Shown: in pieces, positions 27,966-29,417 of the stretch | Layout: every line of letters begins with the position of its first letter | How positions within the stretch are numbered: the stretch's first letter is position 1 | The notes under the pieces: model-generated | The model's input: only the letters and a program-made list of their open reading frames with translations | Database searches by the model: none | Told to the model about the DNA's origin: nothing | Position numbers and translations under genes: made by a program | Source of the DNA: Utricularia gibba | Lineage: Eukaryota > Plantae > Magnoliophyta | Assembly (NCBI GenBank): GCA_002189035.1 | Contig: NEEC01000013.1 | Coordinates: 2,170,001 to 2,234,000, forward strand | DNA: 64,000 nucleotides | Direction: 5' to 3'

Positions 27966-29417
<1,452 letters not shown>

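What the first reader, a model, noticed from the sequence alone, without database searches (positions are those of the whole stretch)
28428..28454. GAPA with the catalytic His replaced by Arg: candidate pseudo-enzyme
Seen: codons ATG ATG ACG ACG ATT CGC TCG TAC GCC encode MMTTIRSYA. Established: GAPA has TMTTTHSYT here, where His176 is the base that activates Cys149 and Thr179 helps bind substrate phosphate. Four non-synonymous changes (T>M, T>I, H>R, T>A), each reachable by one transition, cluster in nine codons. The NAD(P) fold, Cys149 motif, S-loop, frame and splice sites are intact. Inference: this is either a recently inactivated duplicate or a catalytically dead subunit kept for scaffolding or regulation (A2B2 or CP12-PRK complex), or relaxed selection on Calvin-cycle genes. 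Clustered substitutions are not the error type seen elsewhere in the window.
Basis: partly seen in the sequence, partly recalled or inferred. Interest (0 to 1): 0.8.

Follow-up and report, generated by a model that had tools for sequence, protein, structure and literature searches.

The report
Expressed plant GAPA lacking catalytic histidine
An intact, transcribed chloroplast GAPDH-A gene, probably from the bladderwort Utricularia gibba, really has arginine in place of the catalytic histidine; it is most likely a gene copy that has only recently begun to lose its function, but I could not check whether the plant has another working copy.

Summary
On the minus strand, 28454-28428 reads MMTTIRSYA where spinach GAPA and 196 of 225 homologues read TMTTTHSYT. 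These are T171M, T175I, H176R and T179A.

The gene is otherwise whole. It has five exons, four GT-AG introns of 61-74 nt and a 393-aa product with a transit peptide, Cys149, Arg195/231 and the S-loop. The position of intron 1 is shared with another Lamiales GAPA gene.

The change is not an assembly error. Every 31-mer of 28400-28468 spans at least one changed base. Both indexed words are held by DNA runs of two studies and by four RNA runs of a third.

No other homologue has a credible non-His residue at 176. Two metagenome scans found no GAPDH with Arg there.

The host is a long-branch Lamiales plant, which other agents of this scan identified as Utricularia gibba. That plant is photosynthetic and anciently polyploid, and the scan's notes list other dead duplicates in the genome.

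My best reading (0.55) is a still-transcribed GAPA copy that was disabled only recently. A retained dead subunit, or an enzyme working with a Cys-Arg pair, is not excluded.

The parts
29397..29417 (-). Exon 1: start codon and MAVSSLR (start of the transit peptide)
   Evidence: The homologous first exon MASAALSSLQ, with an intron at the same position, is present in Phtheirospermum L001.
29323..29396 (-). Intron 1, 74 nt, GTTCAC...TTGTAG
   Evidence: It is required to join the ATG to the frame of [10 protein letters not shown], and an intron sits at the same position in L001. The splice was not verified with RNA reads.
29218..29322 (-). Exon 2: [35 protein letters not shown] (transit peptide)
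   Evidence: Local tblastn aligns it to L001 [38 protein letters not shown].
29150..29217 (-). Intron 2, 68 nt, GTGAGA...ATATAG
28842..29149 (-). Exon 3: end of the transit peptide and the NAD(P)-binding fold ([14 protein letters not shown]..., AINDTGG, ...NRNTVNLPW)
28775..28841 (-). Intron 3, 67 nt, GTAAGG...AAACAG
28530..28774 (-). Exon 4: the rest of the N-domain and the catalytic Cys149 motif [12 protein letters not shown].
28469..28529 (-). Intron 4, 61 nt, GTCAGT...GATGCAG
27966..28468 (-). Exon 5: catalytic domain, S-loop, Arg195 and Arg231, ending ...VANKWK and the stop codon. There is no GAPB-type C-terminal extension.
28428..28454 (-). Altered active-site strand MMTTIRSYA (precursor residues 232-240). 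The changes are T171M, T175I, H176R and T179A, at changed bases 28453, 28441, 28438 and 28430.
   Evidence: Words spanning these bases are held by DNA and RNA runs.

Best explanation
This is a structurally intact, transcribed nuclear gene for chloroplast GAPDH subunit A in a fast-evolving Lamiales plant, probably Utricularia gibba. Its active-site strand has acquired Arg in place of the catalytic His176 and Ala in place of the phosphate-binding Thr179, plus the milder changes T171M and T175I. I read it as a gene copy that lost, or nearly lost, catalytic activity very recently in this lineage. It remained under strong purifying selection for almost all of its history, so it still has an intact frame, splice sites, transit peptide and promoter activity. 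The plant's Calvin-cycle flux would then be carried by another GAPA copy and/or GAPB. Shown here: the sequence, the gene model, the rarity of the residues, the presence of the variant in independent DNA and RNA data, and the low long-term dN/dS. Inferred: the loss of activity (from the known roles of His176 and Thr179), the existence of a second functional copy, and the recency of the change.
For: The motif and alignment are. His176 is invariant in about 225 homologues. PMC9287727 describes His176 as the partner that deprotonates Cys149 and Thr179 as a Ps-site ligand, both strictly conserved in photosynthetic GAPDH. The 5-exon model is intact with GT-AG introns and an intron-1 position shared with Phtheirospermum. 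The variant-spanning words occur in DNA runs of 2 studies and RNA runs of 2 studies. dN/dS against Phtheirospermum is 0.02-0.05, so any relaxation must be recent. The window protein has 9 deviations at conserved columns against a median of 0, and the second-longest terminal branch, about 1.9 times that of its sister Striga. The host is photosynthetic: a Lamiales long branch, named U. gibba by other agents, with Calvin-cycle genes expressed in shoots (PMC3141634). In Arabidopsis, cutting GAPA to 9% lowers assimilation by 73% and GAPB cannot fully substitute (PMC11025378), so a sole dead GAPA would be costly. Unchecked scan notes list other dead duplicates in this genome: petC 53 kb away, CP12, FBPase and DMC1. 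The neighbouring SCL23 gene in this window has frameshifts.
Against: No second GAPA gene was seen, because the genome outside the window could not be searched. There is no stop, frameshift or splice lesion, and the gene is transcribed, so nothing but the active site marks it as dying. Four of the nine conserved-site changes sit in nine residues (P about 0.01). Random decay does not predict this. It suggests either one complex mutational event or directed remodelling of the active site. U. gibba deletes redundant DNA quickly, so finding a duplicate at exactly this early stage is somewhat improbable beforehand. Only two sampled 31-mers support the read evidence, and they do not prove that all four changes, or homozygosity, are present in the reads.
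Confidence: 0.55

Rival explanations
1. Retained pseudo-enzyme. The Arg176/Ala179 subunit is catalytically dead but kept by selection as a structural or regulatory partner. It could sit in A2B2/A8B8 tetramers with an active GAPB, or act as a CP12/PRK-binding scaffold. It may even be the plant's main or only GAPA.
For: The frame, splice sites and transit peptide are intact, as are the NADP-specificity residues, S-loop, Arg195/Arg231 and Cys149. The gene is transcribed in several libraries. Damage is concentrated in the catalytic strand rather than spread over the protein. No canonical U. gibba GAPA turned up, although this is uninformative because the species is absent from the collections.
Against: There is no evidence of conservation in relatives or of selection after the change. 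Five further changes at near-invariant columns (P139T, V221I, K284R, V299M, R320M) fit general relaxation. Arabidopsis data show that loss of GAPA activity is costly. No dead GAPA subunit is reported in the papers searched.
Confidence: 0.17
2. Still an enzyme. A Cys149-Arg176 pair keeps the thiolate stabilised and supports reduced or altered activity. This would be tolerated or favoured in a submerged carnivorous plant with modest photosynthetic demand.
For: Arg carries a positive charge that could stabilise the Cys149 thiolate, as protonated His176 does (role described). From my own knowledge, untested here, Arg serves as a general base next to a catalytic Cys in IMP dehydrogenase. All other catalytic and cofactor residues are kept. 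Another carbon-metabolism enzyme of this genome (PEPC) is reported by another agent to have clustered changes at a regulatory site.
Against: His176 is invariant in the homologues sampled, and scans of 241 million metagenome records found no GAPDH with TTxRSYTGDQ. The simultaneous loss of Thr179 removes a substrate-phosphate ligand. From memory, engineered His176 replacements in bacterial GAPDH cut activity by orders of magnitude.
Confidence: 0.1
3. Artefact, or a variant that is not fixed. This could be a consensus error, a somatic or culture-line mutation of the sequenced clone, or one allele of a heterozygous locus whose other allele is canonical.
For: read laying could not be run, so allele fractions are unknown. 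Only 2 sampled words cover the motif. Several DNA runs may be the source of the assembly itself. Other genes in the window show frameshifts that could be assembly errors.
Against: Every 31-mer of 28400-28468 spans at least one changed base, and both indexed words are held by DNA runs of two studies (2013, 2019) and four RNA runs of a 2020 study, with one of the two in a 2017 RNA run. Four clustered substitutions are not the error type of long-read assemblies and are too many for a culture-line mutation.
Confidence: 0.08

Closest known systems
Photosynthetic GAPDH subunit A (GAPA, EC 1.2.1.13), e.g. spinach 1JN0/1RM4 and Arabidopsis 3K2B
   Same: The last exon is about 93% identical to spinach GAPA (E about 1e-96), and the full length is up to 83.5% identical to angiosperm GAPAs. 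It has the same two-domain architecture and transit peptide, lacks the GAPB tail, and keeps Cys149, Arg195, Arg231 and the S-loop.
   Different: His176 is Arg, Thr179 is Ala, Thr175 is Ile and Thr171 is Met. There are five further changes at near-invariant columns, and the terminal branch is long.
Engineered His176 mutants of bacterial GAPDH (E. coli and Geobacillus stearothermophilus H176N; from my own knowledge, not retrieved)
   Same: The same catalytic residue is replaced, and a strong loss of acylation and hydride-transfer rate is expected.
   Different: Those are laboratory point mutants to Asn. This is a natural Arg replacement combined with T179A in a plant chloroplast isoform, and its activity has not been measured.
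Pseudo-enzymes (dead paralogues of metabolic enzymes kept for scaffolding or regulation)
   Same: It is homologous to an active enzyme, lacks a key catalytic residue, has an intact fold-determining sequence and is transcribed.
   Different: Retention by selection, protein accumulation and a non-catalytic role are all untested. No dead GAPA subunit was found in the literature searched.
Decaying duplicate genes left by polyploidy in Utricularia gibba
   Same: It is in the same genome, and one of those relics (petC) lies on the same chromosome piece 53 kb away. It affects a photosynthesis gene that would normally be indispensable.
   Different: Those relics carry deletions, frameshifts or missing cores. 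This gene has no structural lesion at all, only active-site substitutions.

Membership tests
Chloroplast GAPDH subunit A (GAPA) | Gp_dh_N plus Gp_dh_C architecture with closest similarity to plant GAPA | tested here: met
   The PDB best hits are spinach and Arabidopsis GAPA at E 1e-94 to 1e-97. The homologues are named GAPA. In the tree it groups with Striga GAPA.
Chloroplast GAPDH subunit A (GAPA) | N-terminal chloroplast transit peptide | tested here: met
   A presequence of about 56 aa (MAVSSLR|[15 protein letters not shown]...) is homologous to the Phtheirospermum and Brassica GAPA presequences, with the same intron-1 position. Import itself was not tested.
Chloroplast GAPDH subunit A (GAPA) | No CP12-like C-terminal extension (which would make it GAPB) | tested here: met
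   The protein ends ...DIVANKWK followed by the stop codon.
Chloroplast GAPDH subunit A (GAPA) | Catalytic Cys149 in the [12 protein letters not shown] motif | tested here: met
   Read in the ORF listing (exon 4).
Chloroplast GAPDH subunit A (GAPA) | Catalytic His176 forming the dyad with Cys149 | tested here: not met
   The residue is Arg (CGC). His is invariant in the homologues. By descent the gene is a GAPA gene, but it fails this feature of an active GAPA enzyme.
Chloroplast GAPDH subunit A (GAPA) | Ps-site ligands Thr179, Arg195 and Arg231 | tested here: not met
   Thr179 is Ala, while Arg195 and Arg231 are kept. The residue roles are from PMC9287727.
Pseudo-enzyme (retained dead paralogue) | Loss of a catalytic residue in an otherwise intact, expressed homologue | tested here: met
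Pseudo-enzyme (retained dead paralogue) | Purifying selection after the loss, or conservation of the dead site in related species | not testable with these tools
Pseudo-enzyme (retained dead paralogue) | Measured lack of activity together with a demonstrated non-catalytic role | not testable with these tools
   This needs biochemistry.
Ordinary pseudogene | Disabling lesions (stop, frameshift or broken splice site) | tested here: not met
   The 1182-nt CDS is open and all four introns are GT-AG.
Ordinary pseudogene | Loss of transcription | tested here: not met
   RNA runs of two studies hold 0.5-0.77 of the gene's words, including the motif words. The run types are the tool's guess.
Ordinary pseudogene | Neutral evolution (dN/dS near 1) on the recent lineage | tested here: inconclusive
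   Long-term dN/dS is 0.02-0.05 with saturated dS. There is an excess of changes at conserved columns, but no close relative is available to isolate the recent branch.

The most novel reading that the evidence does not exclude
This is the bladderwort's main or only GAPA. The plant would then run its Calvin cycle with an A subunit whose catalytic His-Cys dyad has been replaced by Arg-Cys and whose Ps site lacks Thr179. That subunit would be either a non-catalytic partner of GAPB/CP12/PRK kept by selection, or a mechanistically altered GAPDH. It would be the first natural photosynthetic GAPDH subunit without the catalytic histidine.
Probability: 0.15. Interest if true: 0.8.

Novelty: new member of a known kind. 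Interest (0 to 1): 0.4.

Why it matters
His176 is one of the most conserved residues in GAPDH. It was invariant in every credible homologue sampled here, and no Arg replacement appeared in two metagenome scans. A natural, intact and transcribed GAPA with Arg176 and Ala179 in a green plant is therefore a rare object. If another normal GAPA exists, this is a very early stage of duplicate-gene death, with the active site lost before any structural lesion. That would be useful mainly as an example of how post-polyploid gene loss begins in a genome known for rapid DNA loss. If it is the main GAPA, it would change how the A subunit's role in the A2B2/CP12/PRK system is understood, and it would provide a natural Cys-Arg GAPDH for mechanistic study. 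A single whole-genome search would decide between these two cases.

Tried and rejected

External queries used only 27969-28468, 28330-28560 (repeat finder, local to the window), 28844-29322, other genes, or proteins of other species. In my own closed-sandbox scripts I did translate the full spliced CDS, which includes those 36 bases. I aligned it with local BLAST, MAFFT and FastTree to proteins and one locus already fetched.

3. The search for homologous proteins with the 166-aa last exon reaches only proteins of 91-290 aa. A profile built on a Brassica scaffold row plus window pieces (A3) reached full-length GAPAs. Neither search returned anything more than 83.5% (full length) or 93% (last exon) identical, so the host species and its family are not in the collection. 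Paralogues and orthologues could not be examined.

4. The look-up of encoding contigs with three window ORFs found nothing on record.

5. Literature and supplement searches for Utricularia GAPA/GAPDH found nothing.

6. A metagenome scan for the exact motif gave 0 hits. A scan for TTxRSYTGDQ gave 5 hits, none of them GAPDH.

7. I rejected the idea that the host is a non-photosynthetic parasite, which the notes on dead petC, CP12 and FBPase had suggested. The SCL23 homologues put it equidistant (58-68% identity) from all Lamiales families, including Orobanchaceae, and other agents identified U. gibba.

8. I looked for a gene-conversion or template-switch origin of the cluster. There is no second copy of the motif in the window. 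A 7-nt inverted repeat, CATCATC/GATGATG, includes the T171M codon, but repeats that short are common, and it could explain at most one of the four changes.

Full report
**Observation**

The finding lies on the minus strand. The reverse complement of 28428-28454 is ATG ATG ACG ACG ATT CGC TCG TAC GCC, which encodes MMTTIRSYA. It sits in a 173-codon ORF that continues ...[34 protein letters not shown]... and ends in WK and a stop.

phmmer against all PDB chains gives spinach and Arabidopsis chloroplast GAPA as best hits, at E 1e-94 to 1e-97. It aligns [16 protein letters not shown] to IIKGTMTTTHSYTGDQ. In standard GAPDH numbering the changes are T171M, T175I, H176R and T179A.

**Gene model**

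I assembled the gene from five exons: 29417-29397, 29322-29218, 29149-28842, 28774-28530 and 28468-27966. The four introns are 74, 68, 67 and 61 nt, and all are GT...AG. The CDS is 1182 nt and encodes 393 aa.

The short first exon (MAVSSLR) and its intron looked doubtful at first. The GAPA2 locus of Phtheirospermum japonicum (L001) has the same arrangement: MASAALSSLQ, then an intron, then [10 protein letters not shown]....

The following are all present:
- the transit peptide
- the GXGXXG fold
- Asp32 and Thr33
- the Cys149 motif
- the S-loop
- Arg195 and Arg231
- the GAPA-type C-terminus, without the GAPB tail

The splice joints could not be confirmed with RNA reads.

**Rarity of the residues**

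Across 239 homologues from two protein searches, 225 contain a recognisable motif. Of these, 196 read TMTTTHSYT, 19 read LMTTTHSYT and 3 read MMTTTHSYT, and the rest are singletons.
- Met171 is a natural variant.
- Ile175 occurs once.
- Arg176 and Ala179 never occur.
- The only other non-His entry, a Phaseolus cDNA-derived sequence (H->P next to an indel), looks like a sequencing error.

A scan of the JGI metagenome collection for the exact motif found nothing. A scan for TTxRSYTGDQ found five matches, none in a GAPDH gene.

PMC9287727 states that His176 deprotonates and stabilises the Cys149 thiolate and that Thr179 hydrogen-bonds the Ps-site phosphate. It describes both as strictly conserved in photosynthetic GAPDH.

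**Is the variant real and expressed?**

I used the run index instead.

Every 31-mer inside 28400-28468 overlaps at least one of the four changed bases. That stretch has two indexed words. The holders are:
- both words: DNA runs of two studies (2013 and 2019; some may be the assembly's own source)
- both words: four RNA runs of a 2020 study
- one of the two words: a 2017 RNA run

The same RNA runs hold 0.5-0.77 of the words of the whole gene, which is about the exonic share of that stretch.

So the variant is in reads, not only in the assembly, and the gene is transcribed. This does not show that all four changes are present in each run. It also does not show that no canonical allele exists.

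**Host organism**

A neighbouring SCL23 (GRAS) gene finds only Lamiales at the top: Paulownia, Sesamum, Orobanche, Erythranthe, Salvia and Olea. All are at 58-68% identity, so this is a long branch with no close relative in the collection.

The GAPA protein groups with Striga, on a branch about 1.9 times longer.

Introns of 61-74 nt, the scan's count of about 1,600 windows on 426 pieces, and DNA runs dating from 2013 all fit Utricularia gibba. Other agents of this scan reached that identification independently.

U. gibba is photosynthetic. Its shoots express Calvin-cycle genes, and it has the highest nuclear substitution rate among the asterids compared (PMC3141634).

**Selection**

Against Phtheirospermum, the last exon has 12 non-synonymous and 84 synonymous codon differences (dN 0.05, dS saturated). 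The N-terminal exon gives dN/dS of 0.05. The gene was therefore under strong purifying selection for nearly all of its history.

The window protein nevertheless deviates at 9 of 243 columns that are at least 97% conserved. The median for other proteins is 0, and the next-highest among well-predicted proteins is 6.
- Four of the nine are the motif changes.
- The other five are P139T, V221I, K284R, V299M and R320M.
- Four of nine falling within nine residues has P of about 0.01 by simulation.

The pattern is a recent, modest excess of changes at conserved sites, with a non-random concentration on the catalytic strand.

**Interpretation**

Replacing His176 and Thr179 should abolish or severely cut catalysis. 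This is an inference from their established roles.

In Arabidopsis, reducing GAPA to 9% lowers assimilation by 73%, and GAPB cannot fully compensate (PMC11025378). A photosynthetic plant with only this GAPA would therefore pay a high price.

U. gibba is anciently polyploid. The scan's unchecked notes list other dead duplicates of essential genes, including petC 53 kb from this window, CP12, FBPase and DMC1. The SCL23 gene in this window is frameshifted.

The simplest reading is a GAPA duplicate disabled very recently and still transcribed (confidence 0.55).

Three things count against this reading:
- the gene has no structural lesion
- the changes are clustered
- no second copy was seen

The rivals I keep are a retained dead subunit (0.17), a still-active Cys-Arg enzyme (0.10) and an artefact or non-fixed allele (0.08).

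**Limits**

The copy number of GAPA/GAPB, the allele state, the splice joints, the expression level and the state of relatives were not testable. The reads tools were exhausted, and the species is absent from the protein and contig collections.

They were used only inside closed-sandbox scripts, as part of the spliced CDS.

No paper in the library mentions a Utricularia GAPA or a natural GAPDH His176Arg.

Noticed in passing
window 16100-17763 (-): A Scarecrow-like 23 (GRAS) gene has a reading frame that breaks after ...LITIVE. The rest of the GRAS domain continues in two other frames (16376-16537 and 16254-16463), so there are at least two frameshifts within about 400 nt. This is either a real pseudogene, which would be interesting in a rootless plant, or indel errors in the assembly.
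   Followed up: partly
window 52943-54952 (-): An LRR receptor-like kinase is split over three abutting or overlapping ORFs: LRR 54395-54952, kinase N-lobe 53559-54395 and kinase C-lobe 52943-53614. I did not resolve whether the breaks are introns, frameshifts or assembly indels.
   Followed up: no
window 28449-28455 and 28461-28467: A perfect 7-nt inverted repeat, CATCATC/GATGATG, with a 5-nt loop includes the T171M codon. The canonical ACN codon would make it imperfect, so a template-switch origin for that one change is conceivable. Repeats this short are common (6 pairs in 231 nt).
   Followed up: partly
window 27966-29417 (-) compared with L001 2590-4374: The bladderwort GAPA prefers G-ending codons (third positions: G 142, C 121, T 73, A 57), whereas Phtheirospermum GAPA2 uses C-ending codons almost throughout. 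Synonymous sites are saturated (84 of 166 codons differ silently) even though both plants are Lamiales.
   Followed up: partly
That cost the session's only read-laying run. A future session should lay 27900-28560 and 28605-29600 separately.
   Followed up: no
protein P0329 (Phaseolus vulgaris GAPA entry): This public GAPA entry reads TMTTTPSYTGDRALDAS (His176->Pro plus a neighbouring indel). It is most likely a cDNA sequencing error, and it shows that database noise can mimic catalytic-residue loss.
   Followed up: partly
window 25379-27300 (-) and 29973-30485 (-): GAPA is tightly flanked by a flavin amine-oxidase gene, whose first coding exon (about 27120-27248) lies roughly 700 bp beyond the GAPA stop codon, and by a GRAM-domain (GEM-like) gene about 550 bp upstream of the GAPA start. 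A very AT-rich spacer at 29560-29900 is the likely shared promoter region.
   Followed up: no
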